From IMG/VR virus record IMGVR_UViG_3300028840_001395, positions 186,001-250,000 of that record: DNA of 64,000 nt, one strand, 5' to 3'. The notes beneath the pieces are model-generated. The model worked only from the letters and a program-made list of their open reading frames with translations. It had not been told where the DNA came from and did not search any database. A program made the translations under genes and the position numbers. Below, in pieces: positions 6,185 through 60,195 of this stretch (its first letter is position 1; the number at the start of each line of letters is the position of its first letter).

Positions 6185-6186
6185 CC

Positions 6187-12146: not shown

Positions 12147-12162
12147 GGTCACGGAGGTTTCG

Positions 12163-14098: not shown

Positions 14099-14101
14099 TC
14101 T
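14073..14101 (+). promoter_or_regulatory. Phage motif promoter copy 10 (drives ligase C-half; overlaps endonuclease stop)
   Basis: GCTTAT-N17-TAGTCT then GAAGGAG and ATG; the TAG of the -10 box is the endonuclease stop codon. Confidence 0.8.
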
Positions 14102-14115
14102 AGGTGAAGGAGAAG

Positions 14116-32482: not shown

Positions 32483-32483
32483 T

Positions 32484-33146: not shown

Positions 33147-33156
33147 GAGGTACCTC

Positions 33157-33765
33157 TTACTCGAACTTGTAACCGAACCGCTCCAAGTCCTCTGCGAAGA
33201 TCCTCTCCAAGAGCGCCCGTGATTCGTCGTCGTAGTAGTCCCGGTAGTCCTTCTTCCGTTGGGTGATGTTGACGTGGGGGAACTCGATCCTCGGGAGGCC
33301 CATCCGCTTCCGAAGATCGTGGACACAGGTGGGCAGCTCCTCGAACTTGAGCACCACATCCACGATCTGCTGACCATCCTCGTCCGTGACGAACTCGGTC
33401 AGCGTGGCATAGGAGTTGACCCCGTAGACCCGAGGCTCCTTGGTCTTCATCTCGTACCAGCGCAGGTACTCTGCGAGGCTCTTGCCCTGCATGAACTTGT
33501 GGAAGTTGTGGCCCGGCTTCTGGACGATGTAGAAGTAGGTGGAAAGCATCCAGTCGAAGGGATTGCGGACCATCAGGAACTTCAAAGCATCGTTCCACTC
33601 TTGAATCCGGCCCTTCGACTCGAACCACTTCTTCACGTCCCGAGGCAGAACGTGCCCACCCAGGATATCATCGCCACAACCCTCGAACACCTTCCGAAGG
33701 GACATCCCCCCTGTGCGGAAGATGTGGAAGAACAGGTAATTGTCGTCAGCATTGAAAAGAGCCAC
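33157..33765 (-). CDS. Sulfotransferase family 2 protein
   Basis: FFHIFRTGGMSL (PAPS loop), VRNPFDWMLSTY, KFEEL, DYRDYYD, DLERFGYKF. Confidence 0.85.
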   Translation of the reverse strand: MALFNADDNYLFFHIFRTGGMSLRKVFEGCGDDILGGHVLPRDVKKWFESKGRIQEWNDALKFLMVRNPFDWMLSTYFYIVQKPGHNFHKFMQGKSLAEYLRWYEMKTKEPRVYGVNSYATLTEFVTDEDGQQIVDVVLKFEELPTCVHDLRKRMGLPRIEFPHVNITQRKKDYRDYYDDESRALLERIFAEDLERFGYKFE

Positions 33766-33806
33766 GGGTATATCCTTTCGGGTTCTCGGTCAGTTTGTCG
33801 TCCACC

Positions 33807-34541
33807 TTACTTCCGAATGAGCACGAACCCTGCACTCAGATAGGGACGCCTCGCTGACGGAAGGCTGTTGGTCTGTATGTCATCGTAGAACTCCCGAGCC
33901 TGCTCCCGATACGCCTCGGTGTCCGGCAGATCGGTCGGCTCGGCTACCGTGGCCAAGTCCTCCACGGCTGCGAACAGATCACGGAAAGCGTCCGCATCGA
34001 AGTTGAACTGCTCGGGCCAACTTTGGTGGGGTTCCGGCCACTCCCCTTGCTGGTAGTAAGTGGCCACCTCAAAGGCCGGGACAGTCACCACGAGGGGAGC
34101 ACCGGGCTTCAGGAGTGACAGCAGGTTCCTGACGATTCGCAGAATCTTGTCCCAGTCGTTGTGCTCGATGGCACTGAGGCTCAGGATGCCATCGAAGGAG
34201 CCGGGGTCAAGCATGGGAGTATCTTCCAGATCCGATTGGATCAGGGTGGCCCGAGTGATGCAGTCCTGGTGGTGATGCCCTGGCTTGACATCGACGTTCA
34301 CAGCTTCGCCGTAGTTCTCAGCCAGGAAGTGCTGCATCGAACTCTGACCACCTCCAGCATCCATCACACGGGCCTTGTCGTGCGGCTGCTGGACGTAGGT
34401 AGCCAGCTTCTCACAAGCCCAGGAGTACTCTGCCGTGTAGGGCCAACGATCTGGCCACTTATACCCAGGACGCCGCTTCTCTCGAATCACAGCATGTTGC
34501 TGAAGAACGTCTTCCACACGGTAGTCGAGGGGGATAAGCAT
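33807..34541 (-). CDS. Class I SAM-dependent methyltransferase
   Basis: RVMDAGGG, FDGILSLSAIEH, LLKPGAPLVVTVP. Confidence 0.8.
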   Translation of the reverse strand: MLIPLDYRVEDVLQQHAVIREKRRPGYKWPDRWPYTAEYSWACEKLATYVQQPHDKARVMDAGGGQSSMQHFLAENYGEAVNVDVKPGHHHQDCITRATLIQSDLEDTPMLDPGSFDGILSLSAIEHNDWDKILRIVRNLLSLLKPGAPLVVTVPAFEVATYYQQGEWPEPHQSWPEQFNFDADAFRDLFAAVEDLATVAEPTDLPDTEAYREQAREFYDDIQTNSLPSARRPYLSAGFVLIRK

Positions 34542-34546
34542 GAGAT

Positions 34547-37500
34547 TTACCTCTTGATTCCGAGAAGATTCAGAGAGACGGTGTCGTAGGATGACCAGTC
34601 CCTCACCGCCTTGATCTCCGGTACTTCGTTACTCTTCCATTCCTTGATATCCTTGAACCCTGCTGCGATCAGCAGCTTGGTCAGGGACTCCTTCACGAAG
34701 GTCTGCTTGTGGCGGTCGGGTTCCTCCGCCGCCTTGCGGAAGTCTCCGAACAGGGGAGCGTTGGGGTCTTTTCCGAACTTGTGCGACTCGACGCAGTTGG
34801 CCACGATGAGTCGCAGATCAGGAACCGCGACCCGAAGGATACCTCCAGGACGTAGCGCCTGGTGCCAGTTCCGTAGGATGTCGAGGGTTTCCTCGGCGTA
34901 GAAGTGCTCAAGGACATGGCAGGCGTAGATCTCGGAATAGGCCGCGCTCGGGAGAGCTTCGTGGGCGTCGAGCACCTGATCGACTGCCGGGCCGGGCCTC
35001 AAGTCCGTGTTGATGTAGCCCTTGATGTGCTTGTCGCCACAGGCGATGTGGAGCTTCAGTTCTTTCTGGGGCGGGGTGGGTTCCACGATGTCTACCTCGG
35101 GAATCGAGACAGTTTCATGGTTTCCGGTTGGGAGCGCCAAGCCCCTCTGTCGGCGTTCCTCCCGGACGATGGCGAGAAGTTGTTCCATTGCAACGTCCCA
35201 CGTCCAGTGGTCACGGGCCAGTTCGTATCCGGCCTGCTGAATGACAGCCCTGTCCGCATCCCGTTCGGGTCTCAACCAGTCCCGGAGTAGCTCGACAAGC
35301 TCCTCGTTGTCCTTCCAGATGACGCAGTTGACCCCATCTTGCAGACCGTAGCCTTCCATGTCATCGAAGTACTGGACGGCACAGAAGCCCTTGGTGATGA
35401 GGGAGTCGGGAAGTCGGTCGGAAGTGTAGCGGCGGAGCTTCTGGAAGAGGGACTGCACGACCACGACGCGGGCGACGGAATGAAGCTCTGCACGCCGAGC
35501 CCGTGCGATAAACGGGTGTGATAGGATGGGCTGGCGGAGCTTGTTCCAGGAATGTCCGTAGCAGACATACATCCCCGGAAGGGCCTTCTCGATGTCCAGC
35601 GCCATCTGAACGCGAGGTGCCACCCCCGGCCCCTTGTGGAACCCAGTGTGAGGAGACCCTGTGAAGCAGGCCTTCCCAGCCGCTTTCCAGTCCTTCGGAT
35701 TCCCCTGACGAGGCCCGTTGACGGTGGTGTCCGTCCCGATAATATGGTGCCCAGTCTTGGCCCGGACACCCATCTCTCTGAGCTTCTCGGCGTAGGTACA
35801 CTCCGACGAGAGGAACAGGTCAAGTTCCTTGCACTGATCTGCCTGCCACGCCTCAACCGGCTCGTCAATGTCCGTCCGGACATCCCCCGTCCACGACACG
35901 ATGAGGCAGTTCGGAGGGGCGAGCTTCCGCATCTGACGGATGATGCCCGAGTTGAAAGCCCTGTTCCCCTGCACCTGCATCCAGATCAGAGTTGGCTGGT
36001 GCGTCCTGATCAGCTCATAGACCTCTTCATACATCCGATTGAGACCGACCTTCTGCCTTCGTTCGTTCCAACGGATCGTCTGATATGGCCCCATCCTTGC
36101 CAAAGCCAGACAGTGACCATGTTGGGCTTCATGCGACCCGGCAAGAGAGACGTGCAGGACTCTCTCGGGAGGCCCGGCTTCAATCGGTGACCGCCGGTGA
36201 GGCATCCCCCGCTTAGGGTTGTACACGTTGGGCCAACCCATCGGGTCTCGGGTGATAGGCCTCGCGTACTTCTTGTTGTATTTCTTATGCCACGCATCCC
36301 GGTGCTTATTGAGGCGCGTTGAGTTGGCTTCCCTGTTGGGATCGTCCAGAGTCTCATTCACCAGGTCGATGAGCGTCACATCAGGCTTACGCTCCATCTT
36401 CCAACCCAGCCGATGTCCTCGCAGCCCCCAGGCCGAGTCTCCCCCGTAGGTGTGATGTGTCCGGGTGTTTTCGTCGCCCCAGAAGGCCCCGAAGCCTTCC
36501 GCGATGATGTCCTCGCACATCTCCCGGCGAGCAACGACCTGGTTGGGGTGAGGAAGACCAGGGGCTTGAGGGAAGTCCATCTTCATGTAGGTCTTACCCC
36601 GGTCACGGCTCATGTGAAAAGCCACGGCCCCGAGAGTTGGGTCGGAGTCCAGGTGCCGTATCGCGTTCGCTATCGACTTCCCTTCGATGATGATGTCGTC
36701 GTTGATCTGACAGATGAACCTGCCCTTGGACGCTTCATACGCCCGGTTGAAAGCCGGAATCGCCCCCTCCATCCCTCCCAGGATGGGCCGGATATCAGAC
36801 TGCTCCTTCATCCACGTCATGGATGTGTCGGACTCATCGCCGTAGGCGATGACGATCTCGTAGGTGTAGTCGGAATCCTTGAGGCTCTCGCGGACAGATG
36901 CCACGCATTCCTTGAGCATCTCCGGTCGGTTGACTGTTCCCAGAATCACCGAGCAGTCGATAGGAGCCGCCGTGACCATGCGAGAGATATCCCGCTGCAG
37001 ATCAGGATGGAGGGGGGGAGGGGCAGGCTCGGGGATAACCTCGGGAGGCTTCTGTGGATGCCTGTTCTTCCACTTTCGCACGGAGTCCCGCATCGGCTTC
37101 CGACCGATGCGGGAAGGAGCTTCCTCGACCGGAACCGGAGGCTGATCCCCCCGGAGAGACTTCAGGAGCTTCCTCATGTCCTCCGGAATGTCCTCTGCAT
37201 CATCGAGGCTACCCTGACCGATGATCTCGAAGGAGCCCTTGCGTGAACGACCTTCTCGCTCCAACACCGCCCGGTTCCAGATGTTGTCCGCGTGCTGCAA
37301 GCAGACGATGAGGTCGATCTCCTTGGTGATATCCTTGAACACCGGGCGGGTGTTCATCCCCTTGCGGAAAGCTGCGGCCATCGGGCCGTCTTTGCCCCGT
37401 GCCCGCTCCGGCCAACCCCCGACCTTGCGGAGATGCTCTCCTGCGAAGGAGATGCTCGTCCCGATGAGTCCCTGCTCGGCCCGGCCTGTCCACCGCATCA

Positions 37501-38524
37501 CCCGATCTTCGGCCAGCGCGTAGAACAAAACCTCCGCGACACCCGACCAGTGAGCACCCTCATCGTGAGCCCGACAGGCTGCAGCCAGGCGACCGATGGG
37601 CTGGATGTCGTCATCGTCAGCCAAGAGCACCAGGTCAACGGTCGGACCCGCCGCCTGAAGAATGGCGTTGAGCTTCGAGGTCACCGTCTGACTGGTCACC
37701 TCAACGTAGCGCACCCGCTCCATCTTCTGCACGAGGCCCTTGCCTGCATCGGTGGGCTCCCCACCGACCAGAATCTCGTAGTCCCAACCCGCAGGCACAG
37801 TCTGCTGCTGAAGTCGCTTCAGGCAGGCTTCGAGCAACTTGGGGCGATGGGTCGTGGCGACGAAGAACGCAGCCCTCTTGCTACGAGTGGGCTTGGTCTG
37901 TCTTGGACTGGGCTTGACGGTGGGTGTCACCTTGGGGGCAGTTTGGGGCTTCGGCTTGGGCTTCTTCTTGGGAGCAGGGACCGTCCGGTCAACAAGGCTT
38001 CGGGCCACTCGATAGGTGGCGAGGTTCTTGATATTGGGCCATTCCCGCAAGTACTGCTCGGAGACCATGTAGCAGTGGTCGAGCTTCCCCGCGTTCTCCA
38101 AGGCCACCACGGGCTGGGGGAGGATATCCTTCGCTTCCGCCTCCCCTACCAGATTCAGAGCACCCAGCTTGTCCGGGGAGAGCTTGCCCCACGTCTTGAT
38201 CGCGCTGGCGAAGAAGTGTTGCGGGAGCGTCAGGCCCGAATGCAAGAAGAAGTTGTAGTCGGCAGGGTGGTCAGCCCACTTCTGATGGCACCACTCCCGG
38301 TACACGGGGGCTGACAGCTTCCGCTTGGACAGGAAGTAGCCCCACCCCTGCTTCTGGATGATCTTCCAGGCCGCGCTGAAGTCGCTCTTGAGCGCATTGT
38401 TGCAGACGATGACGTGAACCTGATAGAGCCGGGTCAACGTCTCCAGGTGGGCCAGCAGATTCTTGAGCCCGTTGGCCCCACTCCCTGCCGACACGAGGAT
38501 GGAGATCGAAGGCTTCTTGGTCAT
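34547..38524 (-). CDS. Giant multidomain glycosyltransferase (about three GT2-like domains + GT-B/CgeB-like domain + C-terminal methyltransferase), ~1325 aa
   Basis: SILVS; VATTHRP...LADDDD; SVILGTVNRP...QINDD; TSDRLPDSL...WTWD; KLHIACG...YINTD...CHVLEHF...LRPGGILRVAVPD. Confidence 0.85.
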   Translation of the reverse strand: MTKKPSISILVSAGSGANGLKNLLAHLETLTRLYQVHVIVCNNALKSDFSAAWKIIQKQGWGYFLSKRKLSAPVYREWCHQKWADHPADYNFFLHSGLTLPQHFFASAIKTWGKLSPDKLGALNLVGEAEAKDILPQPVVALENAGKLDHCYMVSEQYLREWPNIKNLATYRVARSLVDRTVPAPKKKPKPKPQTAPKVTPTVKPSPRQTKPTRSKRAAFFVATTHRPKLLEACLKRLQQQTVPAGWDYEILVGGEPTDAGKGLVQKMERVRYVEVTSQTVTSKLNAILQAAGPTVDLVLLADDDDIQPIGRLAAACRAHDEGAHWSGVAEVLFYALAEDRVMRWTGRAEQGLIGTSISFAGEHLRKVGGWPERARGKDGPMAAAFRKGMNTRPVFKDITKEIDLIVCLQHADNIWNRAVLEREGRSRKGSFEIIGQGSLDDAEDIPEDMRKLLKSLRGDQPPVPVEEAPSRIGRKPMRDSVRKWKNRHPQKPPEVIPEPAPPPLHPDLQRDISRMVTAAPIDCSVILGTVNRPEMLKECVASVRESLKDSDYTYEIVIAYGDESDTSMTWMKEQSDIRPILGGMEGAIPAFNRAYEASKGRFICQINDDIIIEGKSIANAIRHLDSDPTLGAVAFHMSRDRGKTYMKMDFPQAPGLPHPNQVVARREMCEDIIAEGFGAFWGDENTRTHHTYGGDSAWGLRGHRLGWKMERKPDVTLIDLVNETLDDPNREANSTRLNKHRDAWHKKYNKKYARPITRDPMGWPNVYNPKRGMPHRRSPIEAGPPERVLHVSLAGSHEAQHGHCLALARMGPYQTIRWNERRQKVGLNRMYEEVYELIRTHQPTLIWMQVQGNRAFNSGIIRQMRKLAPPNCLIVSWTGDVRTDIDEPVEAWQADQCKELDLFLSSECTYAEKLREMGVRAKTGHHIIGTDTTVNGPRQGNPKDWKAAGKACFTGSPHTGFHKGPGVAPRVQMALDIEKALPGMYVCYGHSWNKLRQPILSHPFIARARRAELHSVARVVVVQSLFQKLRRYTSDRLPDSLITKGFCAVQYFDDMEGYGLQDGVNCVIWKDNEELVELLRDWLRPERDADRAVIQQAGYELARDHWTWDVAMEQLLAIVREERRQRGLALPTGNHETVSIPEVDIVEPTPPQKELKLHIACGDKHIKGYINTDLRPGPAVDQVLDAHEALPSAAYSEIYACHVLEHFYAEETLDILRNWHQALRPGGILRVAVPDLRLIVANCVESHKFGKDPNAPLFGDFRKAAEEPDRHKQTFVKESLTKLLIAAGFKDIKEWKSNEVPEIKAVRDWSSYDTVSLNLLGIKR

Positions 38525-39546
38525 CAGAACCAATCCAGGCCGAACACGGCGTTGCGGACTTCATCCCAGTAGGCGAACTCTCGACACTCATCCAAGGAGT
38601 ACGTCTTGCGAAGCTCCGACCCGAACGTCGTGATGCGGGCCAACAGCCCAAGCTCGTTCTGGAAGTGCCACCACTCGGCTCCGCCCGCGTTGCCCGAAGT
38701 GAAGAAGCTCCGCCGGGCGCGGATGCGGTTGAAGCCGTGCTTGAGGGCGACATCGGTGAAGCTGAAGAACACCCCCTGCACCCGCTTGGTTGTCGGGATG
38801 TGGACGGTATTGCCCCCCGAGTCCTTCTGCTCGATGACCTGCCATGCCTCGATGGTCATCTTACCACCGGCCACGGAGCCGCCGTAGAGCTTCTTGATGA
38901 GCGCATCCTTGTCCAACGAGGACCGGCACCAGACCTCCCAGTGTCGGTCGGAGTGCGGGTCGGCTTCGATGATGTAGGGGTCTGTCTCGGGATCGGCCAT
39001 CCCTGACAAGGGAGCGAGGTCGAAGGCCCGTCCGACATAGTGGAAGGACTTCTTCGAGCGGTTGGCGTTCGACCCCGCCGTGAGCAACCTCCGGCCACCC
39101 GCCGAGGTGACGATGCCACCGAGGTCGTGAACCTCGTCATAGAGGGCCTGGTAGAAGGGTGCGATGTCTGACCGGAGAACGGTGCCCTCGTTGCCCTGGC
39201 CGTTGAACTGGTCAGCCGGGCAGGCGGGCCAGTAGGGCTTGGTCAGGTTGAGCTGGCTGCCGTCATCGTCGCTCGGCTCGATCTCGGTATCGGGGGTCAC
39301 ATCTACGTTGTAGTCGATGTGGTAGGCTGCTCCCCCGTCGCCCAGAGCGAAGTTGTAGGCCGAAAGGGTGCTGTCCCCCACCTCACCATCCGAAAGGAGC
39401 CCAGAGGCCGTCTGGAAGGCGCTGACGGCTCTTTCTGTCCCCTCTCCGAACACCCCATCTGCGATGCCGGGATGATAGCCCAGGTAGGCGAGTCCTAGCT
39501 GGAGGTTGCGGACATCCTCTCCGCGTGATCCTATCCTCAGAATCAT
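38524..39546 (-). CDS. Peptidoglycan-binding + M15-like zinc peptidase (endolysin or virion lysin)
   Basis: PG_binding_1 pattern LRIGSRGEDVRNLQ...DGVFGEGTERAVSAFQ...DGEVG; SFHYVGRAFD and EWWHFQ. Confidence 0.85.
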   Translation of the reverse strand: MILRIGSRGEDVRNLQLGLAYLGYHPGIADGVFGEGTERAVSAFQTASGLLSDGEVGDSTLSAYNFALGDGGAAYHIDYNVDVTPDTEIEPSDDDGSQLNLTKPYWPACPADQFNGQGNEGTVLRSDIAPFYQALYDEVHDLGGIVTSAGGRRLLTAGSNANRSKKSFHYVGRAFDLAPLSGMADPETDPYIIEADPHSDRHWEVWCRSSLDKDALIKKLYGGSVAGGKMTIEAWQVIEQKDSGGNTVHIPTTKRVQGVFFSFTDVALKHGFNRIRARRSFFTSGNAGGAEWWHFQNELGLLARITTFGSELRKTYSLDECREFAYWDEVRNAVFGLDWF

Positions 39547-51373: not shown

Positions 51374-52240
51374 ATGCCCAAGTATGGCAACATCCCGACC
51401 CGGCTCAAGGTGTTCCTGCGGGCGGCTATCCAGTTCAAGCGGCCCCACGGGGACGCAGTGCAGTGCTGTCCGGCCTTCGTGACCGACCTGGACAGGCCCA
51501 AGACCCACGACACCGCCCGCCGATGGGCGGGTCGTGCCCAGTACAACCCCTCCTACGCGGTGGTCTACCCGAACACCAAGGTCGAGGGATTGGGGCAGGA
51601 CAACAAGCCCATCCCCAGCGTCACGTTGGTCGGTACGGACGCCCGGCAAGAGGGTGGCTTCGCCTTCAAGGTGGTGACCCCGGAGGGCTGGCTCGTGGAC
51701 CTCCGCAAGGAGGAGTTCTACGAGGTGCTGTTCAAGAAGGGCATCCCCAAGTCCGGCAAGATGGTGGGGCCGTTCCAGTGGGTCGTCAACGGCAGCCAGA
51801 TGCGGCTCACGCTGGTCGGGTCGAGGCTCTACAAGGAGATCGAGGAACTGTCCAAGATCCGCAAGAAGCCTCGGAAGGGCAAGCTCGGGATTCGTGACCT
51901 CGAAGTCGGGGGAGTCTACACGAGCCAGGGTGGCAACAACTACGGATGCGATGCCGTCTTCCTGGGCCGTGCCCGCTTCGACGGCAAGCTCAAGTGCGCC
52001 TGGGTCTACGTCGCCGGGCACTACAGCTCGGTAGCCGGGTATCAGACGGCCTACCAGCGGGCGCTCAAGGAGGGGTGGAATCGGCCCGTTGTGGTCCTGA
52101 CCAGCGGTTGCTCCTACACGGAGTGCGTTGGTAAGGTGGATCTGAAGCCGAACCCGCGTGAGTCTCCGATGACGGAGCACGTCGAGTTCCAGGACGGCTA
52201 CGGGACGAAGCTGTATCGCCCCCGAGTGACGGAGTGGTAG
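51374..52240 (+). CDS. Hypothetical protein (~288 aa)
   Basis: Promoter and GGAGG RBS; FKVVTPEGWLVDLR...F.WV..GSQMRL. Confidence 0.75.
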   Translation: MPKYGNIPTRLKVFLRAAIQFKRPHGDAVQCCPAFVTDLDRPKTHDTARRWAGRAQYNPSYAVVYPNTKVEGLGQDNKPIPSVTLVGTDARQEGGFAFKVVTPEGWLVDLRKEEFYEVLFKKGIPKSGKMVGPFQWVVNGSQMRLTLVGSRLYKEIEELSKIRKKPRKGKLGIRDLEVGGVYTSQGGNNYGCDAVFLGRARFDGKLKCAWVYVAGHYSSVAGYQTAYQRALKEGWNRPVVVLTSGCSYTECVGKVDLKPNPRESPMTEHVEFQDGYGTKLYRPRVTEW

Positions 52241-52242
52241 AG

Positions 52243-52713
52243 ATGGACATCAAATCCAAGGGCAAGTACCCGTCGAACGCACTGTCGAACTTCGCCCCGC
52301 ATCCGTTCTACCTGGACGGCATCCTGTGCAACTCGATGGAGGGGTTCCTCCAGTCGCTCAAGTTCGACAAGCCGCACATCCAGGCTGAAGTCTGCAAGCT
52401 GACGGGTCTGGCGGCGAAGAAGCGTGGGTCGAAGCGCACCAAGACCTGGCAGAAGGTACAGAGGCTCTGGTGGCAGGGACAGATCTACGACCGGCACGGA
52501 GAGAGCTACCAGCGGCTGCTCGACCGGGCCTACGCTGCTTTGGCCAAGAACGAGAAGTTCAAGAAGGCCCTCCTCGCCACGGGTGACGCCGTGCTGACCC
52601 ACAGCATCGGGCACTCCAACGCCCGTCAGACTATCCTGACCGAGCGGGAGTTCGTCCGGCGGCTCATGGCAATGCGGAAGGTTCTCCAGTGGAAGGAGGA
52701 GGCCGAGGGATGA
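52243..52713 (+). CDS. NADAR-family protein (T4 gp30.3/YbiA-like ADP-ribosylhydrolase fold)
   Basis: ALSNFAPHPFYLDG...SMEGFLQSLK, LWWQG, NEKFKKALLATG, ILTEREF. Confidence 0.82.
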   Translation: MDIKSKGKYPSNALSNFAPHPFYLDGILCNSMEGFLQSLKFDKPHIQAEVCKLTGLAAKKRGSKRTKTWQKVQRLWWQGQIYDRHGESYQRLLDRAYAALAKNEKFKKALLATGDAVLTHSIGHSNARQTILTEREFVRRLMAMRKVLQWKEEAEG

Positions 52714-53003
52714 AGCCCGCACGCATCAAGTTCCTGACCGCCGAGGAGGGTGGCCGGAAGGCTCCCCCACAACACGACAGGCCCTTCAACTACCGGACTC
52801 ACGCGGGGCCGACAACCGACCACAACGACGCCTCGTGGACGCTCGTAGTCGAGTTCGAGAAGAATCCAGGGGCCGGGCAGTGGGAGGACTGCACGGTCAA
52901 CTACCTGGCCTACAACCATCCCAAGTGCCCGCCGCTGACGCCGGGCACCGAGCTTTTCTTGTTCGAGGGCTACAGGATCGTGGCGCTCGTCAAGGTGGCC
53001 TGA
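52710..53003 (+). CDS. Stand-alone EF-Tu domain III-like protein
   Basis: FLTAEEGGRKAP...YR...LTPGTELFLFEGYRIVA matches the EF-Tu C-terminal pattern LSKDEGGRHTP...FAIREGGRTVG. Confidence 0.6.
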   Translation: MKPARIKFLTAEEGGRKAPPQHDRPFNYRTHAGPTTDHNDASWTLVVEFEKNPGAGQWEDCTVNYLAYNHPKCPPLTPGTELFLFEGYRIVALVKVA

Positions 53004-53485
53004 TGCGCCAGAAGCTCATCTTCCTCGACATCGACGGGGTGCTGAACAACTCCGGCTGGTGGGAGAAGCTCTACGCCGATCAGTCACAGAGTCCCTATCT
53101 GTTCGACCCCCAGAACGTCACGTCCCTCAACATGATCCTCGACCAGACCGGAGCGAACATCGTGATCTCGTCGGCCTGGCGGCACGGCAAGAAGCTCAAC
53201 TGGCTCAAGAAACACCTGCGGAAGCAAGGCGTCCGAGGTCACGTCCTCGGTGTCACACCCGATGGCTGGAACATCAAGAGCTTCCCCGAAAACTGGGTTC
53301 GGGGTCACGAGATCGAACTCTGGCTCAAGAGGCATACGGACGGGAAGGCCGTGTTCGTCATTCTGGATGACGACGATGACATGGGGCCGCTGATGGACCG
53401 GCTCGTCCAGACGGATATGAAGTACGGGCTGACGCCGGAACTGGCGGCGAAAGCGACCCGGATGCTCAAGGGGGTGACCTGGTGA
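53003..53485 (+). CDS. HAD phosphatase, Swiss-Army-Knife RNA-repair type (HAD_SAK_2)
   Basis: IFLDIDGVL, IVISSAWR, RGHEIELWL, FVILDD, VQTD..YGLT. Confidence 0.85.
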   Translation: MRQKLIFLDIDGVLNNSGWWEKLYADQSQSPYLFDPQNVTSLNMILDQTGANIVISSAWRHGKKLNWLKKHLRKQGVRGHVLGVTPDGWNIKSFPENWVRGHEIELWLKRHTDGKAVFVILDDDDDMGPLMDRLVQTDMKYGLTPELAAKATRMLKGVTW

Positions 53486-55385: not shown

Positions 55386-55414
55386 ATAGTAGGGGCCTTC
55401 TGGCCCCGTGTCAA
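55386..55414 (-). promoter_or_regulatory. Host sigma70-type promoter
   Basis: TTGACA-N17-TACTAT, near-consensus. Confidence 0.75.
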
Positions 55415-55929
55415 GATCCTTCTCCGCCTTCCATGACCGCCAGCATCGACCGGAACGTCGCCCCATCGTCCGTGGGGCCAGGAACGAGAACCTCTTTCCA
55501 GTTCGAGCCTATCTGCTTGATGACCCCCAACCGGAACTTGATGATGGCCTTGGCCTCGACCTGGCGGATGCGCTCACGGGTCAGGTTGAACAGCTCACCC
55601 ACCTTCTCCAAGGTGAGGCCATCTGGATTCCTCTCGGCCACGTCGAGGACACAGCTCTCCCCTCCGATGTGCTCTCCCGCTTCGACCTCGGGGAAGTTCG
55701 GCATGATGGAGCCAGCGTGGCTCACGTCGAGGTAGAGGTTGTACTTGCAGGTGACGTAGGGACAGGGCCGAACCCCGTGCCTGCAATGCGCCCGGAGACG
55801 GGGGAGATGACGGGGTGTCCTCGGCCCCTGGAGAGGTTCTTCGTTGTTGACCGGGATGGTCTTCTTGAACTTGCGTTTCGGGTTCATCTCGGGATCGATC
55901 TGAAGTGCTGTGGCTCCTTCTTCCATCAC
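55411..55929 (-). CDS. Stand-alone sigma-70 region 4 HTH protein with Cys-containing N-terminal domain
   Basis: LTLEKVGELFNLTRERIRQVEAKAI (sigma region 4.2); RPCPYVTCKYNLYLDV...CVLDVAE; no sigma region 2. Confidence 0.85.
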   Translation of the reverse strand: MMEEGATALQIDPEMNPKRKFKKTIPVNNEEPLQGPRTPRHLPRLRAHCRHGVRPCPYVTCKYNLYLDVSHAGSIMPNFPEVEAGEHIGGESCVLDVAERNPDGLTLEKVGELFNLTRERIRQVEAKAIIKFRLGVIKQIGSNWKEVLVPGPTDDGATFRSMLAVMEGGEGS

Positions 55930-55942: not shown

Positions 55943-56033
55943 TGGTCGCTCCGACAGGAATCGAACCTGCGATGCGGGTGTCACCCCGAGCGGATTTAGA
56001 GTCCGCCTCCTTCGACCACTCGGACACGGAGCG
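55943..56033 (-). tRNA. Amber-suppressor tRNA (anticodon CUA), class II, encoded CCA
   Basis: CGCTCCG/CGGAGCG acceptor + A73 + CCA; D arm TCC-GAGTGGTCGAA-GGA; GCGGA-CTCTAAA-TCCGC; 19-nt variable arm; GCAGG-TTCGATT-CCTGT. Confidence 0.9.
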
Positions 56034-56043
56034 ATTGAAGTGT

Positions 56044-56258
56044 GGCGCGTGACAGGAGTCGAACCTGCATAACCCTCCCCACAAGGGGGAAGGCAAAGAA
56101 GAGGCCAGGCCTGGTCAAGAGAGGGGCCTGCGACATCCACGCCGAGCGGGCCTAGCAGGCCCGTGTCCCGACTCATCCCATCTGCATGGCGATCCACCAT
56201 GCGTGCCCTTCTTCTCCCCCGGTTAAAGCGGGGGGCCTCACCGTTGGGCTACACGCGC
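56044..56258 (-). tRNA. Ochre-anticodon (UUA) tRNA-Gln-like RNA with 148-nt insertion in the variable region
   Basis: GCGCGTG/CACGCGC acceptor; GCC-CAACGGTGA-GGC D arm; CCCCG-CTTTAAC-CGGGG anticodon arm; GCAGG-TTCGACT-CCTGT T arm; no canonical encoded CCA (C73-ACA). Confidence 0.65.
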
Positions 56259-56268
56259 ACTGTCCTCT

Positions 56269-56297
56269 ATACTACTCTCTAAGGCGGGAGGATAAGC
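56269..56297 (-). promoter_or_regulatory. Phage motif promoter copy 19 (TAGTAT variant, tRNA operon)
   Basis: GCTTAT-N17-TAGTAT, 10 nt upstream of the first tRNA base. Confidence 0.8.
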
Positions 56298-56779
56298 CCA
56301 GGAGCATCGAAGTGGGCCATCCCCCCATCCCACCAGCCTACCCGAGCCTTGAACGCAGGATAGCCCTTTCTTATGTCCATGTCACCCGATTTCTTGCGGA
56401 TCAGGTCATTCGCGTAGGCCGGAACCACCCCCGTGGCCGTCGAGACTGTGACGTGGGGAGTCCGGCCCGCTACAGTCCGGAACTTCGTGGGAGGTTTCAC
56501 AATGAGCACCTGGGCCTTCTCATCCGAGACCTCCCCGACCACCTTGACCGCGACCGACTTGCCCCACGGGAGACTGTGGGGCCTTGTCTCTTCGCCGTCC
56601 TTGAAGTGCCAGATGGTCATGTGGTGAGCGAGTCTGACAGGGAAGCTCGGGGGAAAGGCCCGAAGGAGTCGTTGGCGGTCTTGGGAGGCGATGAACAGGG
56701 CGATGTAGATCACGCCATCGTCGGGGTGTCCAGCAACACGTCGCAGCCACCTGGCCGCGACTCGGTTGGCTGCTATCAC
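56279..56779 (-). CDS. 2H phosphoesterase (cyclic phosphodiesterase, tRNA-ligase CPD-like)
   Basis: Two Hx(T/S) motifs: AHHMTI and PHVTVST. Confidence 0.75.
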   Translation of the reverse strand: MIAANRVAARWLRRVAGHPDDGVIYIALFIASQDRQRLLRAFPPSFPVRLAHHMTIWHFKDGEETRPHSLPWGKSVAVKVVGEVSDEKAQVLIVKPPTKFRTVAGRTPHVTVSTATGVVPAYANDLIRKKSGDMDIRKGYPAFKARVGWWDGGMAHFDAPGLILPP

Positions 56780-57198
56780 GTAGTACCCGGCGGAGTGGGG
56801 ATCACCGAGGTTTCAAGCCAGTATCTCTTGACATCCTTCAGAAGGTTCTCCAGGTCACCATAGTTGATCGGCTTGACCACGTAGGAGTTCGCCCCATCGT
56901 AGAAAGACTGGAAGATGTCCGCCTCCAGCTTCGAGGTCGTCATCACGATCACCGGGATGTGGCGCAAGCTCGGATCATTCCGGATTTCCCGGAGGGCTTC
57001 CTGGCCGTCCATCAAGGGCATCTGCAAGTCGAGCATGACCACATCGGGTAACTTGCCCGACCGGAGACGCTCCAAGAGCTTCTGACCGTTCTCGACCCGC
57101 TCGACTTGAAGCGAGCAGTCGCAGTCCTTCATCGCTTCCTGAATGAGAACCCAGTCCTCACGATCATCTTCGGCAAAAAGAACCAGCGGGTCACTCAT
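56776..57198 (-). CDS. Single-domain response regulator (Rcp1/CheY-like)
   Basis: LFAEDD, PDVVMLDLQMPLMDG, IPVIVMTTS, GANSYVVKP. Confidence 0.93.
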   Translation of the reverse strand: MSDPLVLFAEDDREDWVLIQEAMKDCDCSLQVERVENGQKLLERLRSGKLPDVVMLDLQMPLMDGQEALREIRNDPSLRHIPVIVMTTSKLEADIFQSFYDGANSYVVKPINYGDLENLLKDVKRYWLETSVIPTPPGTT

Positions 57199-58288
57199 TG
57201 TGGGACTCCGGGGTCAAAGGGATTCTGATAATGAACGCAGCGCCGACGCCAGGTTCACCGCGAGCTTCGATGGTCGCCCCATACTGCTCAAGCAGACGAC
57301 GACAGAGGGCCAAACCAATACCCGTACCGGGATAGTCAAAGCGGGTGTGCAGCCTCGTGAACACCTCGAAGATCTTGTCCGCGTGCCCCTGGTCGAAACC
57401 AATGCCATTGTCCTGAACCACCACCACCGCGTCGTCTCCCTCGACGGTGCCGTGAATCTTGATCACCAAGGGGCGTTCGGGGTGGCGGAACTTGAGTGCA
57501 TTGGACAGGAGATTGGCGAACACCTGCCGAATCTGCATCGTATGGGCATGGACGGTCGGAAGTTCCCCCACCACGACCTCGGCGTTCGCCTCCTGCACCC
57601 TCAACTCAAGGTCTTGCAGGGCTTCCCGCAGCACACGACCCAGATCGACCACCATGAGAGGTACGTCGGTGTATCCAGCCCGTGCGTAGCTCAGCAGGTT
57701 ATCGATGAGATGGGACATCCGTTCTGTGGCCGAGAGCATCACCTGGAGATATTCGGCCCCGCGTTGGTCTATCTGGTCACTATACTTCTCTGTGAGGATC
57801 TTCCCGAACCCCTTGATCTTGTTCAAAGGTTCCCGGAGGTCGTGAGAGGCAGCATAGGCGAAGCTCTGGAGGGCTCGGTTGGAGGACTCAAGTTGCTTGG
57901 TGCGCTCCTGAACAGCATCTTCGAGCTTCTTCTGGGCCTTCTTCTGCTCGGACACATCCCTGATCACAACGATCACCTCGTTGTCTCCCGAGGCAGAGAA
58001 GCGGGCCTCGAACACACAGTCGGGGAACTCGTCCAGGGTGTATTCCCAGAGCAGGACTTCGCCGGTCTCCAAAGCTCCGAGGATGTAGTGCATCGCCTGT
58101 TCAGTGAACTCGGCGTCAAAGATCTCACCGACGGTCCGACCCACATACTCACTCGGAGAGACAAGCGACGGAACCTTCCCGACATGGGTGTCGAGGAATC
58201 GACCTTCTCGATTGAGCAGGTGGAGCATGTCCGGAGTTGCCCGAACGAATGCTCGGTAACGAGCCTCAATCGTGGTCAAGTGATCCAT
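57191..58288 (-). CDS. PAS-domain sensor histidine kinase (HisKA + HATPase_c)
   Basis: N-terminal PAS; ASHDLREPL (H box); NLLSNALKF; DNGIG; GTGIGLALC. Confidence 0.93.
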   Translation of the reverse strand: MDHLTTIEARYRAFVRATPDMLHLLNREGRFLDTHVGKVPSLVSPSEYVGRTVGEIFDAEFTEQAMHYILGALETGEVLLWEYTLDEFPDCVFEARFSASGDNEVIVVIRDVSEQKKAQKKLEDAVQERTKQLESSNRALQSFAYAASHDLREPLNKIKGFGKILTEKYSDQIDQRGAEYLQVMLSATERMSHLIDNLLSYARAGYTDVPLMVVDLGRVLREALQDLELRVQEANAEVVVGELPTVHAHTMQIRQVFANLLSNALKFRHPERPLVIKIHGTVEGDDAVVVVQDNGIGFDQGHADKIFEVFTRLHTRFDYPGTGIGLALCRRLLEQYGATIEARGEPGVGAAFIIRIPLTPESHNE

Positions 58289-59073
58289 CCCGACCCCGAC
58301 GCACTCACCATGCTCTTGAGGTCTTTCAAGTCCTTGAGCTTGTCCACGTTGAGTGCATCGAGCAGGAGTACGAACAGAACAGCGACGAGCACCAAGCACA
58401 GGAACATGACGATGGCGGCGACGGGATGGGCACCAATCCACTCAAGTGCCCACTTCCAGGCAGACTTGTTGGCGTTCTTGACCTCCTCCAGAATCGCATC
58501 GTGCTGGGTCTTGTCCTCCTCGGCCCGACGCTTCATCCCCTGGGAGAAGTCACGTCGAAGCTCTGACATCTCCTGAGAGGTCTTGGTCTGGGCCTGGACG
58601 GACTCTCGGGTCAACCCCACAAGCTGCTCGATGAGAACTCCGACACCGGGCGCACCGTCACCATTCTGGCGGCGCTTCTCCTGCACCCCGATGGCATAGA
58701 GGCAAGTGCGCTCCAGCAGGTCGCCCCCAAAGGTGCCCTTCTCCAGATACTCGACAGCCCCGATGTCCATTGCCTGAAGCTGAAGGTTCCGGTCTCCATG
58801 ACTGGTCACGATGATGACAGGAGTATGGAAGTGCAGCTCGTGGAGCTTGCGGAGAAACGTGATGCCGTCACTGTCCGGCAGCTTGTAGTCGAGGAGGACT
58901 ACATCGTAGCGGTGATGCGTCTGCTGGAGTTGGTAGAAGCCTTCCTGTGCCGTGTGCGCGTCGTCAACGACGAACTTCGCTCGGCTGGCGTCCTCTAGCA
59001 GATCCCGGATGAGACGGCAATCGTCCTGATCGTCATCAATCACCAAGACCCGGACGGTCAAAGGAGAAGGCAT
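58276..59073 (-). CDS. Response regulator receiver fused to a coiled coil and C-terminal TM helix
   Basis: LVIDDDQDD, VLLDYKLPDSDG, IIVTSHG, YLEKG; then coiled coil and VAAIVMFLCLVLVAVLFVLLL. Confidence 0.85.
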   Translation of the reverse strand: MPSPLTVRVLVIDDDQDDCRLIRDLLEDASRAKFVVDDAHTAQEGFYQLQQTHHRYDVVLLDYKLPDSDGITFLRKLHELHFHTPVIIVTSHGDRNLQLQAMDIGAVEYLEKGTFGGDLLERTCLYAIGVQEKRRQNGDGAPGVGVLIEQLVGLTRESVQAQTKTSQEMSELRRDFSQGMKRRAEEDKTQHDAILEEVKNANKSAWKWALEWIGAHPVAAIVMFLCLVLVAVLFVLLLDALNVDKLKDLKDLKSMVSASGSGWIT

Positions 59074-59095: not shown

Positions 59096-60133
59096 TCAGG
59101 AGCAGTAGGAAAGCTGCTTGGTCAGGTAGCGGTTGAGGTTCGTGAGCGCCCGGAACAGCGTGCGACTGTCGTCCACCGTCGCATGAATGGCCTTTTCGAG
59201 ATAGTTGTCGATCTTCCGGGCCATCGTGCTGTCCTGGCGAGCGACCTTGGCAAGCAAGACCGAAGCCCGGTCAAGGGCAGTCTGGATGGCCTCCGCATCC
59301 GGCTCATAGCCGCCCTTGATGAGATCCATCGCCGTGCTGATCTCGACCTGAAGCTGCTTCAGGCCAGGGATGCACACGGTCACGCTCTGGGTGCCCCAGC
59401 CGAAGCCCACGTCGCGGGCCAGACCCACCGGGTACTCGCCCTGGGGCAGCTTCTTGCCGTCCACCGGGGAGACATGGTTGCGACCGAAGGCGTCCACGTA
59501 GCCGTGGCTCACGCGCTTGGCGTAGTGCTTCTGAAGCTCACGCTTGGCCATGTTGAGGTCAGGGAACCAGAATCGCTGGTCGGTATCGAACTTGGCCCCG
59601 TCGATGCGACCCGTTGCGCCGGAGTCCGTCATCGCGCCCCAGCGCCGGATGACCTTGAAGCCACCCTCGTCCGGGACGACCATGCCCTCGTAGAACTTCG
59701 ACTTGTTCTTCGCGGCATCGATCAGGTAGACCATGAAAGCCTCACCCGCCTTGACCTTGTTCCGGTTCAGGCCCTCCCGTTGCAGGATCGGCTTGTGGGC
59801 CACCTTGCGGAGCAGGGCATACTTCTCCATGCAGGTCAGGCCCGCCCACTTCTGGACGGTCATGCCCTGCTTCTGGTAGCAGAAGCACGCGATCTTCGCG
59901 GCCTCGACGGCTTCGAGGCGCATCTCATGGGCCTGCTTGAGCAGTGGGATGAGGTGCTGCCGGGTCTCCGGGTTATCGGAGGCGCACTTCTGCATCTCAG
60001 CCAGCAGACCCGACTCCTGGGCCTCGCTCAGCTCCACGAACTCATCCTGGTCGAACACGTCCAGGTAGGGCTGATCGGGGGTCATCGTCTGGTGCTTCTT
60101 CTTGGCACCGATTTCCTGGGGGTCAAAGTCCAT
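59096..60133 (-). CDS. WGR-domain protein (non-catalytic)
   Basis: KNKSKFYEGMVV...KVIRRWGA...KRVSHGY in the centre; helical flanks. Confidence 0.65.
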   Translation of the reverse strand: MDFDPQEIGAKKKHQTMTPDQPYLDVFDQDEFVELSEAQESGLLAEMQKCASDNPETRQHLIPLLKQAHEMRLEAVEAAKIACFCYQKQGMTVQKWAGLTCMEKYALLRKVAHKPILQREGLNRNKVKAGEAFMVYLIDAAKNKSKFYEGMVVPDEGGFKVIRRWGAMTDSGATGRIDGAKFDTDQRFWFPDLNMAKRELQKHYAKRVSHGYVDAFGRNHVSPVDGKKLPQGEYPVGLARDVGFGWGTQSVTVCIPGLKQLQVEISTAMDLIKGGYEPDAEAIQTALDRASVLLAKVARQDSTMARKIDNYLEKAIHATVDDSRTLFRALTNLNRYLTKQLSYCS

Positions 60134-60195
60134 CACATCCTCCCGCAAGGGTATTCGTCTCCACCCCTACGGAAATATCAAAGCCCTACCGAGAA

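What the first reader, a model, noticed from the sequence alone, without database searches (positions are those of the whole stretch)
55943..56297. Tandem amber (CUA) and ochre (UUA) stop-codon-reading tRNA genes under a dedicated phage promoter, in a genome that still stops at TAG
Seen: promoter GCTTAT-N17-TAGTAT, then an RNA with anticodon loop CU-UUA-AC, then 10 nt later a complete tRNA with loop CU-CUA-AA and encoded CCA, then the sigma-region-4 gene. Both RNAs share a near-identical T arm (GCAGG-TTCGA(C/T)T-CCTGT with a G49.U65 pair). Seen: many full-length genes here end in TAG (PARP, cysC, ThyA-like, both ligA-associated ORFs ending at 13302 and 14098), and conserved enzymes have no internal TAG, so this is not genome-wide code-15 recoding. 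Known: recoded phages carry single suppressor tRNAs; UUA can read UAA and UAG. Inference: timed suppression of two of the three stop codons, leaving only UGA reliable, could sabotage host termination, counter an RF- or tRNA-targeting defence, or switch on readthrough isoforms.
Basis: partly seen in the sequence, partly recalled or inferred. Interest (0 to 1): 0.92.

Follow-up and report, generated by a model that had tools for sequence, protein, structure and literature searches.

The report
Amber suppressor tRNA beside giant-armed tRNA
A 436-kb standard-code phage carries, in one small operon, a genuine UAG-reading tRNA and a second tRNA-shaped RNA whose variable loop holds a conserved 148-base folded domain; that domain, not two-stop-codon suppression, is the unusual part.

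Summary
The sequence facts are right. RNA2 (56033-55943, minus strand) is a real class II tRNA with anticodon CUA and an encoded CCA. It looks Tyr-like. In six related phage contigs U33-CUA-A37 never changes while the stems change in compensating pairs. Where a homing-endonuclease gene destroyed it, another CUA tRNA sits in its place.

RNA1 (56258-44) is not an ordinary ochre tRNA. ARAGORN and Rfam miss it because about 148 nt of conserved structure sit where the variable loop should be (45 pairs, 13 compensatory). With that stretch removed in silico it is a 73-nt tRNA. Its anticodon is UUA in four relatives and UGU, in a typical Thr loop, in two. The insert carries an invariant hairpin that recurs in other small RNAs of these phages. 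Rfam has no family for it, and 185,579 bacterial and archaeal genomes gave only four apparently chance matches.

The promoter is real but is the phage's general one. About 140 kb of this genome uses the standard code, with TAG ending about a third of genes, no in-frame TAG, and an intact tail sheath gene.

So conserved amber suppression in a standard-code megaphage is supported. Coordinated suppression of two stop codons is not. RNA1 is most likely a tRNA-framed functional RNA, or a tRNA with a new kind of intervening sequence.

The parts
56267..56297 (-). Promoter: -35-like GGCTTA(T) at 56298-56292 and -10-like box GAGTAGTATAG at 56277-56267. It overlaps the TAG stop of the 2H gene.
   Evidence: Sequence. 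The box GAGTAGTMTAG has 23 hits at up to 2 mismatches in the window against 3.4 expected. The aligned promoters show GG(G/T)CTTAY-N15/16-GAGTAGTMTAGG. The TATAG variant also precedes the phage tmRNA and two other RNA candidates. The simple sigma-70 consensus scan does not call it.
56044..56258 (-). RNA1, a tRNA-shaped RNA of 215 nt. It has a 7-bp acceptor stem, D arm, anticodon arm (loop CUUUAAC, UUA at 56226-56224), a hypertrophied variable region, T arm (56068-56052) and discriminator C (56044). No CCA is encoded.
   Evidence: The minimum-energy fold gives the cloverleaf plus the insert domain, z = -3.0. In the six-sequence alignment A5, 68 pairs are 95.5% paired and 17 are compensatory, against 3-7 in slid controls. 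ARAGORN calls a 73-nt tRNA only after the insert is deleted. It is not called in native form.
56069..56216 (-). Inserted structured domain in the variable region of RNA1. It consists of a long stem, a three-way junction with a variable hairpin, an arm ending in the invariant hairpin, and a second C/G-rich hairpin.
   Evidence: 45 predicted pairs, 94% paired, 13 compensatory, against 3-5 in slid controls. It is present in all six relatives, at 140-170 nt. No Rfam family matches at E up to 10.
56131..56155 (-). Invariant hairpin module: C-UAGGCCCGC-NNN-GCGUGGAUGUC-G, closed by a stem that covaries.
   Evidence: One copy in the window against 0 expected. It recurs in nine other RNA contexts with closing stems CUGC/GCAG, UUAC/GUAG, ACGC/GCGU, UCUC/GAGA and GGGC/GCCU. 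The four hits in 185,579 genomes look like chance matches.
55943..56033 (-). RNA2, a class II tRNA of 91 nt. It has anticodon CUA (55999-55997), a long variable arm, C1-G72, A73 and an encoded CCA. It is an amber suppressor and is Tyr-like.
   Evidence: ARAGORN. Rfam tRNA at 55 bits. The D arm and anticodon stem are 89-94% identical to phage tRNA-Tyr genes. In alignment A6, U33-CUA-A37 is invariant and the stems change in compensating pairs.
55411..55929 (-). Gene for a protein with sigma-70 region 4. It starts 13-25 nt after RNA2 with no terminator in between, so it is probably co-transcribed.
   Evidence: Pfam Sigma70_r4, E 1e-6. No terminator-like site was found on this strand. The same order holds in L003, L004, L005, L145, L147 and L149.
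56279..56779 (-). Upstream gene for a 2H phosphoesterase of the CNPase / tRNA-ligase CPD type.
   Evidence: Two HxT motifs are invariant in 13 homologues. There is a weak Pfam match to tRNA_lig_CPD. The AlphaFold model has pLDDT 81. The best structural matches are CNPase (TM about 0.6), the fungal tRNA ligase kinase-CPD, and giant-virus RNA ligases; Acb1 matches more weakly. The gene is dispensable for the RNAs: an HNH insertion destroyed it in L145, and it is absent in L088/L147 and L149.

Best explanation
The locus is a small RNA operon. One copy of the phage's general promoter drives RNA1, RNA2 and the sigma-region-4 gene, probably as one transcript.

Shown:
- RNA2 is a working-type class II tRNA with anticodon CUA. 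It is kept by selection across the clade.
- RNA1 has a complete tRNA body with a conserved, folded insert of 140-170 nt in the position of the long variable arm.
- The insert contains an invariant hairpin that also occurs in stand-alone small RNAs, and in another RNA framed by an acceptor stem and T arm, in these phages.
- The anticodon of RNA1 is UUA or UGU, depending on the relative.

Inferred:
- RNA2 is probably charged with tyrosine and inserts an amino acid at UAG. Because a third of the phage's own genes end in TAG, with no back-up stops, this is likely at modest efficiency.
- The conserved function of RNA1 lies in its inserted domain, not in reading UAA.
- The tRNA body of RNA1 most likely serves as a frame for RNase P and 3'-end processing, CCA addition and stability, and possibly for delivery to the translation machinery, as in tmRNA.

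The neighbourhood is an RNA-repair and NAD/ADP-ribose island. It holds the CPD-type 2H enzyme, a HAD 'Swiss Army Knife' RNA-repair domain, a gp30.3/NADAR protein, and PARP and WGR proteins. The operon therefore probably belongs to the phage's takeover or protection of translation during infection.
For: RNA2:
- It is called as a tRNA.
- It resembles phage tRNA-Tyr genes.
- Conservation with compensatory changes is shown.
- L149 keeps only this tRNA.
- In L088/L147 an HNH gene replaced its 3' half, and a different 74-nt CUA tRNA sits next to it.

RNA1:
- Cloverleaf plus insert is shown.
- It becomes a tRNA on deleting the insert.
- The UGU allele is seen in L004 and L145.
- The core tertiary nucleotides are kept (U8, A14, G18G19, the T loop, and a conserved AU before the T stem).

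The hairpin module outside RNA1:
- L012/L064 is elsewhere in the same genome.
- It also occurs in L100, L075, L040 (just before a tRNA array) and the second L005 copy. That copy lies in an RNA framed by an acceptor stem and T arm with no normal anticodon arm.

Standard code.

Promoter family, including the tmRNA promoter.

RNA-repair neighbourhood.
Against: - There is no expression, processing or aminoacylation data.
- The Tyr identity of RNA2 rests on partial BLAST similarity and A73. C1-G72 is atypical for bacterial tRNA-Tyr, and L149 has G1-C72 and G73.
- Four of six relatives keep the exact loop CUUUAAC, so ochre reading may still matter.
- The adjacent CPD-type 2H enzyme is the kind used in protein-mediated tRNA splicing, which favours the intron rival.
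- Only about a third of the genome was examined for in-frame stops.
- The function of the hairpin is unknown.
Confidence: 0.5

Rival explanations
1. RNA1 is a pre-tRNA with a new kind of intervening sequence in the variable loop. A protein endonuclease cuts it out, possibly recognising the invariant hairpin. The halves are rejoined by a heal-and-seal pathway (CPD-type 2H enzyme, kinase, RNA ligase). This yields a mature 73-nt ochre (or Thr) tRNA and a released small RNA.
For: - Deleting the insert gives a canonical tRNA.
- The adjacent 2H enzyme is closest to CNPase and the Trl1 CPD.
- In L009 an RNA ligase gene lies two genes from the 2H homologue.
- The window has an AAA_33 kinase-like gene and a HAD_SAK_2 RNA-repair gene.
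- Lak megaphages have conserved 'enigmatic' tRNA introns, including one in tRNA-Thr(TGT) (PMC6784885).
- Archaeal tRNA introns that encode functional small RNAs are a precedent (my own knowledge).
Against: - No bulge-helix-bulge motif is apparent by eye at the junctions, and no group I intron or ribozyme matches.
- The 2H gene is destroyed in L145 and absent in L088/L147, yet RNA1 is intact there.
- Relatives L006-8 pair the 2H gene with an ordinary 76-nt UUA tRNA.
- The same hairpin occurs in RNAs that are not tRNAs.
- No endonuclease candidate was identified.
Confidence: 0.3
2. Both RNAs are active suppressors expressed together, so that UAG and UAA are read through and only UGA terminates reliably. 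The purpose would be to damage host termination, beat a defence, or make read-through isoforms.
For: - Both anticodons are present under one promoter.
- UUA and CUA tRNAs recur next to the 2H gene in more distant relatives (L006-8 have UUA, L009/10 have CUA).
- TGA is the commonest phage stop codon, ending 62% of called genes.
Against: - RNA1 carries a 148-nt domain and has UGU in two of six relatives.
- L149 lacks RNA1.
- About a third of phage genes end in TAG, and their next in-frame TGA is no closer than for TGA-ending genes (median 63 against 46 codons, p = 0.17).
- Only two same-frame TAG junctions were found. One is an ordinary junction with a Shine-Dalgarno site and ATG.
Confidence: 0.12
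3. The amber suppressor exists because a few genes in the unread two thirds of the genome carry in-frame TAG. This would be partial recoding of late or lysis genes, as in code-15 phages, but inserting Tyr.
For: - Recoded phages keep standard-code regions and encode their suppressor tRNAs there. Standard-code relatives can acquire suppressors first (10.1101/2021.08.26.457843).
- There is strong selection to keep a CUA tRNA at this locus.
Against: - No in-frame TAG signal appears in about 140 kb, which includes a tail sheath gene and large neighbouring ORFs of 401-1008 aa.
- The genome is 62% GC and uses TAG as a frequent stop, which is the opposite of the TAG-depleted state described as the precursor of recoding.
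- Gene density under the standard code is high in the relatives' contigs.
Confidence: 0.15
4. One or both RNAs are decoys or non-decoding tRNA mimics. They would soak up host tRNA-targeting nucleases or other tRNA-binding defence proteins.
For: - The neighbourhood is rich in RNA-repair and ADP-ribose genes.
- tRNA-Tyr is a known defence target; Septu cleaves its variable loop (PMC13096335).
- The anticodon of RNA1 is not fixed.
Against: - The CUA anticodon and its flanking U33 and A37 are invariant in RNA2, which a decoy recognised by its body would not need.
- No defence system that this would counter has been identified.
Confidence: 0.1

Closest known systems
supF-type amber suppressor (bacterial tRNA-Tyr with GUA changed to CUA)
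   Same: RNA2 is a class II tRNA with A73. Its D arm and anticodon stem are about 90% identical to phage tRNA-Tyr genes, differing at position 34.
   Different: RNA2 is a natural, conserved phage gene rather than a laboratory mutant. It has C1-G72 instead of the bacterial G1-C72. Its amino-acid identity is untested.
Suppressor tRNAs of stop-codon-recoded phages (crAss-like, Lak, Agate and others; Borges et al., Devoto et al.)
   Same: A phage-encoded CUA tRNA lies in a standard-code region, and the genome is very large.
   Different: I found no recoding here, and no release factor or aminoacyl-tRNA synthetase gene among the window ORFs searched. The genome is GC-rich and TAG ends about a third of its genes. 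The described route to recoding starts from AT-rich, TAG-poor genomes.
tRNA Sup:UUA of the cultivated megaphage G
   Same: It is a UUA-anticodon tRNA in a standard-code megaphage (PMC12484599). Relatives L006-8 also have an ordinary 76-nt UUA tRNA.
   Different: RNA1 carries a 148-nt structured insert and alternates with UGU.
'Enigmatic' conserved introns in Lak megaphage tRNAs
   Same: These are phage tRNA genes with conserved intervening sequences of unknown mechanism, including one in tRNA-Thr(TGT).
   Different: The Lak introns were predicted with tRNAscan's eukaryote settings, which look for introns in the anticodon loop (the position is my inference). Here the insert is in the variable region, has strong covariation, and shares a motif with other small RNAs.
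Class II tRNAs and allo-tRNAs (long variable arms)
   Same: The extra structure emerges at the variable-arm position, and the flanking core nucleotides are kept.
   Different: Known variable arms reach roughly 20-25 nt (my own knowledge). This one is 140-170 nt and has a three-way junction.
tmRNA and YrlA (RNAs framed by tRNA-like parts)
   Same: A tRNA-like acceptor stem and T arm frame a large functional RNA. The phage's own tmRNA uses the same promoter variant.
   Different: RNA1 keeps full D and anticodon arms. It has no G3-U70, no tag reading frame, and no tmRNA call from ARAGORN or Rfam.

Membership tests
tRNA (Rfam RF00005), RNA2 | Cloverleaf scoring above the family's gathering score, and called by a tRNA finder | tested here: met
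   55 bits against a gathering score of 29. ARAGORN nt with anticodon CUA.
tRNA (Rfam RF00005), RNA1 | Cloverleaf scoring above the family's gathering score, and called by a tRNA finder | tested here: not met
   There is no hit even at E up to 10 and no ARAGORN call. It is called as a 73-nt tRNA only after the insert is removed in silico. All four arms are supported by covariation.
Functional suppressor tRNA | Aminoacylation and read-through of the stop codon | not testable with these tools
   Only conservation of the anticodon loop could be shown. It is invariant for RNA2. It is UUA in four relatives and UGU in two for RNA1.
tRNA-Tyr identity (bacterial) | Long variable arm, A73, U35; G1-C72 is usual | tested here: inconclusive
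   The long arm, A73 (five of six relatives) and U35 are present. The sequence is 89-94% identical to phage tRNA-Tyr over the D arm and anticodon stem. However, the first pair is C1-G72, and L149 has G73.
Stop-codon-recoded phage (code 15-like) | In-frame TAG in genes, and low coding density under the standard code | tested here: not met
   Coding fraction is 0.80 in the window under the standard code. Only two same-frame TAG junctions were found, no more than expected by chance. None were found in 76 kb of other stretches. The tail sheath gene is intact. About 300 kb was not examined.
Group I intron in a tRNA gene | Conserved catalytic core (P3-P9), usually in the anticodon loop | tested here: not met
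   No Intron_gpI or other ribozyme match at E up to 10. The insert is about 148 nt, lies in the variable region, and forms a Y-shaped fold.
tmRNA | tRNA-like domain with G3-U70, a tag reading frame, and pseudoknots | tested here: not met
   ARAGORN and Rfam are negative for RNA1. The third acceptor pair is G3-C70. There is no conserved reading frame. The phage has a separate true tmRNA.
2H phosphoesterase, CNPase / tRNA-ligase CPD branch (upstream gene) | Two HxT/S motifs and the 2H fold | tested here: met
   H53-x-T55 and H109-x-T111-x-S113 are invariant. Structural matches to CNPase have TM 0.55-0.62, and the fungal tRNA ligase kinase-CPD (6u05, TM 0.46) also matches. Acb1 matches more weakly. 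Pfam tRNA_lig_CPD falls below its cutoff. Enzyme activity is untested.

The most novel reading that the evidence does not exclude
RNA1 may represent a new class of RNA: a complete tRNA whose variable arm has grown into a conserved functional domain of 140-170 nt. That domain is built around a phage-specific hairpin shared with other tRNA-framed and free small RNAs. It might bring a bound factor or regulatory module to the translation machinery. Alternatively, it might be a new protein-spliced intron that releases a small RNA. Either way, together with the neighbouring amber suppressor, tmRNA-class promoter and RNA-repair genes, it would form a phage toolkit for rewiring termination and ribosome rescue.
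Probability: 0.35. Interest if true: 0.8.

Novelty: new variant of a known kind. Interest (0 to 1): 0.62.

Why it matters
Phage suppressor tRNAs have mostly been discussed as tools of stop-codon recoding. Here a CUA tRNA is under clear selection in a GC-rich megaphage that itself ends a third of its genes in TAG. This makes the question of what suppressors do in non-recoded phages directly testable.

Separately, a tRNA with a conserved folded domain of about 150 nt in its variable region lies outside what tRNA finders and Rfam recognise. If it is processed, it defines a new kind of bacterial or phage tRNA intervening sequence. If it is not processed, it is a natural 'tRNA scaffold' RNA. It also points to a family of phage small RNAs that share one invariant hairpin. 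In addition, it shows that automated tRNA counts in huge phages miss such genes.

Tried and rejected
- **Rfam.** I searched the whole window at gathering thresholds and the locus at E up to 10. Only RNA2 was found. Rfam was also negative for the other RNA candidates.
- **BLAST against 50,697 phage records.** The genome has no relative there. The 5' part of RNA1 has no tRNA match.
- **Hairpin scan of metagenomes.** It returned 120 or more stretches, but nearly all were chance matches inside coding DNA. Only L040, L075, L088, L100 and the same phage (L064/L076) were real.
- **Genome scan.** The four hits look like chance matches.
- **nhmmer with the insert profile.** It found no further copy in the window.
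- **Origin of RNA1 and RNA2.** Neither is close to the phage's own tRNAs. The best match is about 70% (Lys for RNA1), so RNA1's amino-acid identity stays open among Lys-, Gln- and Thr-like.
- **Other RNA classes considered for the insert and rejected.** These were group I intron, tmRNA, RNase P-like, Y RNA-like and k-turn. They were rejected on Rfam results or by inspection.
- **Acb1-like anti-CBASS role for the 2H protein.** This is less likely than a CPD-type role, because the structural matches are weaker.
- **Read-through fusion candidates.** The junction at 3346 (minus strand) is an ordinary gene junction. The one at 12112 (plus strand) has a promoter-like box (12138-12148) between the two genes and no family match.
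- **Minimum-energy folds of the other tRNA-framed RNAs.** They were not better than shuffled sequence.
Full report
**What the window is.** The window is 100% identical to positions of about 186,001-250,000 of IMGVR_UViG_3300028840_001395, a 435,804-bp viral contig. The same phage also appears as Ga0180438_10000016. The window's GC content is 62%. It has no relative among 50,697 deposited phage records. A tail sheath, rIIA, a clamp loader, an endolysin-like protein and many nucleotide-metabolism genes mark it as a huge tailed phage. Homologues of its sigma-region-4 protein are common in Myxococcota-type bacteria, which may hint at the host.

**Checking the observation.** On the minus strand the order is as follows:
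- a 2H-phosphoesterase gene (56779-56279);
- a promoter-like pair of boxes (GCTTAT 56297-56292, then 17 nt, then TAGTAT 56274-56269);
- RNA1 (56258-56044);
- ten nt of spacer;
- RNA2 (56033-55943);
- a Sigma70_r4 gene (55929-55411).

ARAGORN and Rfam call only RNA2. It is 91 nt with anticodon CUA, a long variable arm and an encoded CCA, and it scores 55 bits. However, about 148 nt separate its anticodon stem from its T stem.

**The promoter.** The box GAGTAGT(A/C)TAG occurs 23 times in the window at up to 2 mismatches, against 3.4 expected. When aligned, the sites share GG(G/T)CTTAY-N15/16-GAGTAGTMTAGG. Before protein genes, a Shine-Dalgarno site and a start codon follow within about 25 nt. 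A scan of IMG/VR with this pattern hit 12 stretches, all in this same contig. The TATAG variant precedes RNA1, the phage tmRNA (L137) and two further RNA candidates in the window. It is not exclusive to RNA genes. So this is a genuine phage promoter class, not one dedicated to these RNAs. No terminator-like site separates RNA2 from the sigma-region-4 gene. The tRNAs sit in that gene's leader in every relative.

**RNA2.** Its D arm and anticodon stem are 89-94% identical to annotated tRNA-Tyr genes of unrelated phages, and the difference falls at position 34. With A73 and a long variable arm, this fits a Tyr-type amber suppressor. C1-G72 is unusual for a bacterial tRNA-Tyr, and L149 has G73, so I hold the identity at moderate confidence. 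Six related contigs (window, L003, L004, L005, L145, L149) keep U33-CUA-A37 exactly, while the acceptor, D and anticodon stems change in compensating pairs.
- In L088/L147 an HNH endonuclease gene replaced the 3' half of RNA2, and a different 74-nt CUA tRNA lies right beside it.
- In L149, RNA1 and the 2H gene are both missing, but the CUA tRNA remains.

A CUA tRNA at this locus is therefore under selection. Because the assemblies are independent, sequencing error is ruled out.

**RNA1.** The single-sequence fold already gives a cloverleaf plus an inserted domain. Six homologues align well (A5).
- The RNAalifold consensus has 68 pairs, of which 95.5% of cells are paired.
- 17 pairs show compensatory double changes. 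Slid-partner controls give 3-7, and column shuffles give a mean of 9.1.
- For the insert alone the figures are 45 pairs, 94% paired and 13 compensatory, against 3-5 in slid controls.

Deleting the insert in silico turns each homologue into a 73-nt tRNA for ARAGORN. Four have UUA (window, L003, L005, L088) and one has UGU (L004). L145, fetched later, carries the same UGU loop. The UGU loop, CUUGUAA, is a textbook tRNA-Thr loop. The body also has G1-C72 and C2-G71, which are ThrRS identity elements (my own knowledge). L145 looks recombinant: its 5' tRNA half is L004-like and its insert is L003-like. The nucleotides that build the tRNA core are kept, including an invariant AU just before the T stem that is consistent with an A15-U48 pair. 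The insert therefore sits exactly where class II tRNAs carry their long arm.

**The insert and its hairpin.** The insert is a long stem leading to a three-way junction. One arm is a hairpin of variable length. The other arm ends in an invariant hairpin. A second C/G-rich hairpin follows. The invariant element is C-UAGGCCCGC-N2-3-GCGUGGAUGUC-G. It also occurs in these places:
- in a stand-alone RNA elsewhere in the same genome (L012/L064) and in its homologue L100;
- in L075;
- at the start of L040, just before an array of six tRNAs;
- in a second RNA between RNA1 and RNA2 of L005, which is closed by an acceptor-like stem and a T arm but has no normal anticodon arm.

The closing stem covaries: CUGC/GCAG, UUAC/GUAG, ACGC/GCGU, UCUC/GAGA, GGGC/GCCU. 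A variant in the window RNA candidate X2 lengthens the inner helix, which supports the predicted pairing register. Rfam has no matching family. The four hits in one genome from each of 185,579 bacterial and archaeal species look like chance matches. Most of the 120 or more metagenome hits were also chance matches in coding DNA. I could not assign a function to the hairpin. Its complete sequence conservation in very different surroundings suggests a binding site for a protein or another RNA.

**Genetic code.** With a GC3-based gene call, the window has 87 genes covering 80% of the sequence. Their stops are TGA 55, TAG 26 and TAA 6. About 76 kb from other parts of the same genome gives TGA 31, TAG 24 and TAA 3, with ORFs up to 1008 aa and an intact tail sheath gene. 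Same-frame continuation of coding signal across a stop was seen for two TAGs and two TGAs in all. One TAG case is an ordinary junction (GGGAGG, TAG, then ATG). The other lies ahead of the ligase gene, with a promoter-like box between the two ORFs. TAG-ending genes do not have closer back-up TGA stops than TGA-ending genes (median 63 against 46 codons, p = 0.17). The phage therefore uses the standard code as far as I could read, and it shows no sign of adaptation to strong amber read-through. About 300 kb remains unread.

**Neighbourhood.**
- *The 2H protein.* It has both HxT motifs. A confident model (pLDDT 81) matches CNPase, the fungal tRNA-ligase kinase-CPD and giant-virus RNA ligases better than it matches Acb1.
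- *Other genes nearby.* Within a few kb are a HAD domain of 'Swiss Army Knife' RNA-repair proteins, a gp30.3/NADAR protein, a WGR protein and a two-component system. PARP and a kinase-like AAA_33 protein lie further away.
- *Distant relatives.* In these the 2H gene sits beside an ordinary UUA tRNA (L006-8). In L009/10 it sits two genes from an RNA ligase, with a CUA tRNA 3 kb away.
- *Not required.* The 2H gene is not needed for RNA1 or RNA2 to persist.

**The rest of the translation kit.** The genome carries more than 30 ordinary tRNAs and a tmRNA elsewhere. The suppressor pair is therefore a separate unit. Neither RNA is a recent copy of those tRNAs.

**Literature.**
- Suppressor tRNAs are well known in recoded phages and have been seen in standard-code relatives (10.1101/2021.08.26.457843).
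- Megaphage G has a UUA tRNA (PMC12484599).
- Lak megaphages have conserved 'enigmatic' tRNA introns, one of them in tRNA-Thr(TGT) (PMC6784885).
- A recent survey reports intronic sequences in many jumbo-phage tRNAs (PMC13037316).
- I found no description of a variable-region insert like this one.

**Verdict.** The amber suppressor is real and conserved, and it sits in a standard-code genome. The 'ochre tRNA' is something else: a tRNA body carrying a conserved structured domain, with an anticodon that is not fixed. My preferred reading is a tRNA-framed functional RNA, with a protein-spliced intervening sequence as the main rival. Coordinated suppression of two stop codons is unlikely. What the amber suppressor is for remains open.

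Noticed in passing
window 5870-6460 (minus strand): There are two further candidate small RNA genes, X1 at about 6455-6230 and X2 at about 6150-5870. Each sits behind the TATAG variant of the phage promoter, in a stretch with no coding signal. X2 carries a variant of the invariant hairpin (UCUAGGCCC[CCAGGC...GCCUGG]GGGUCGG) and shares a block (GGGCAUAUCUGG) with the RNA at the start of L040. Rfam has no match.
   Followed up: partly
window 12163-14946 (plus strand): The NAD-dependent DNA ligase is split. The adenylation and OB domains are at 12163-13302 and the HhH and BRCT domains are at 14104-14946. A TnsA-like / endonuclease I-like ORF (13271-14098) lies between them, which looks like a mobile endonuclease insertion.
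   Followed up: partly
L134 (same genome, outside the window), 840-1112 minus strand: An RNA of about 265 nt is closed by a 7-bp acceptor-like stem (GCGGGUG/CACCCGC), a T arm and ACCA, but has no recognisable D or anticodon arm. It lies between two tRNA-Gln genes. Its 5' strand overlaps the end of a small ORF. ARAGORN and Rfam do not call it.
   Followed up: partly
L134, L137, L140, L142 (same genome, outside the window): The genome has large tRNA arrays (23, 3, 3 and 2 genes) and a tmRNA with tag ANDEAVLQAA. Three of the tRNAs have 8-nt anticodon loops, reported by ARAGORN as four-base anticodons (tatc once, ggga twice). They could be frameshift-type tRNAs.
   Followed up: no
L145 3590-4290; L147 2770-3370 (= L088): HNH homing-endonuclease genes have invaded this locus in relatives. 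One cuts the 2H gene at its first HxT motif and deletes most of the rest. Another replaces the 3' half of RNA2 and is followed by a Gln/Glu-like CUA tRNA.
   Followed up: yes
window 52234-53485 (plus strand); 16813-18489; 59096-60148; 8218-8712: There is a cluster of RNA-repair and NAD/ADP-ribose genes: gp30.3/NADAR, HAD_SAK_2 ('Swiss Army Knife' RNA repair), a PARP catalytic domain, a WGR protein and an AAA_33 kinase-like protein. A histidine kinase and two response regulators (56776-59073) lie next to the RNA operon.
   Followed up: partly
window-wide, e.g. 11578, 14093, 16783, 44432 (plus strand); 5823, 9359, 11469, 51302 (minus strand): A phage-specific promoter consensus, GG(G/T)CTTAY-N15/16-GAGTAGTCTAGG, is followed within about 25 nt by a Shine-Dalgarno site and a start codon. 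It does not match the sigma-70 consensus well, and the phage encodes small proteins that contain only sigma region 4.
   Followed up: partly
window 29851-38533 (minus strand): This is a sugar-modification block: GDP-mannose 4,6-dehydratase, an epimerase, a sulfotransferase-like protein, and a 1328-aa protein with several glycosyltransferase domains and a methyltransferase domain.
   Followed up: no
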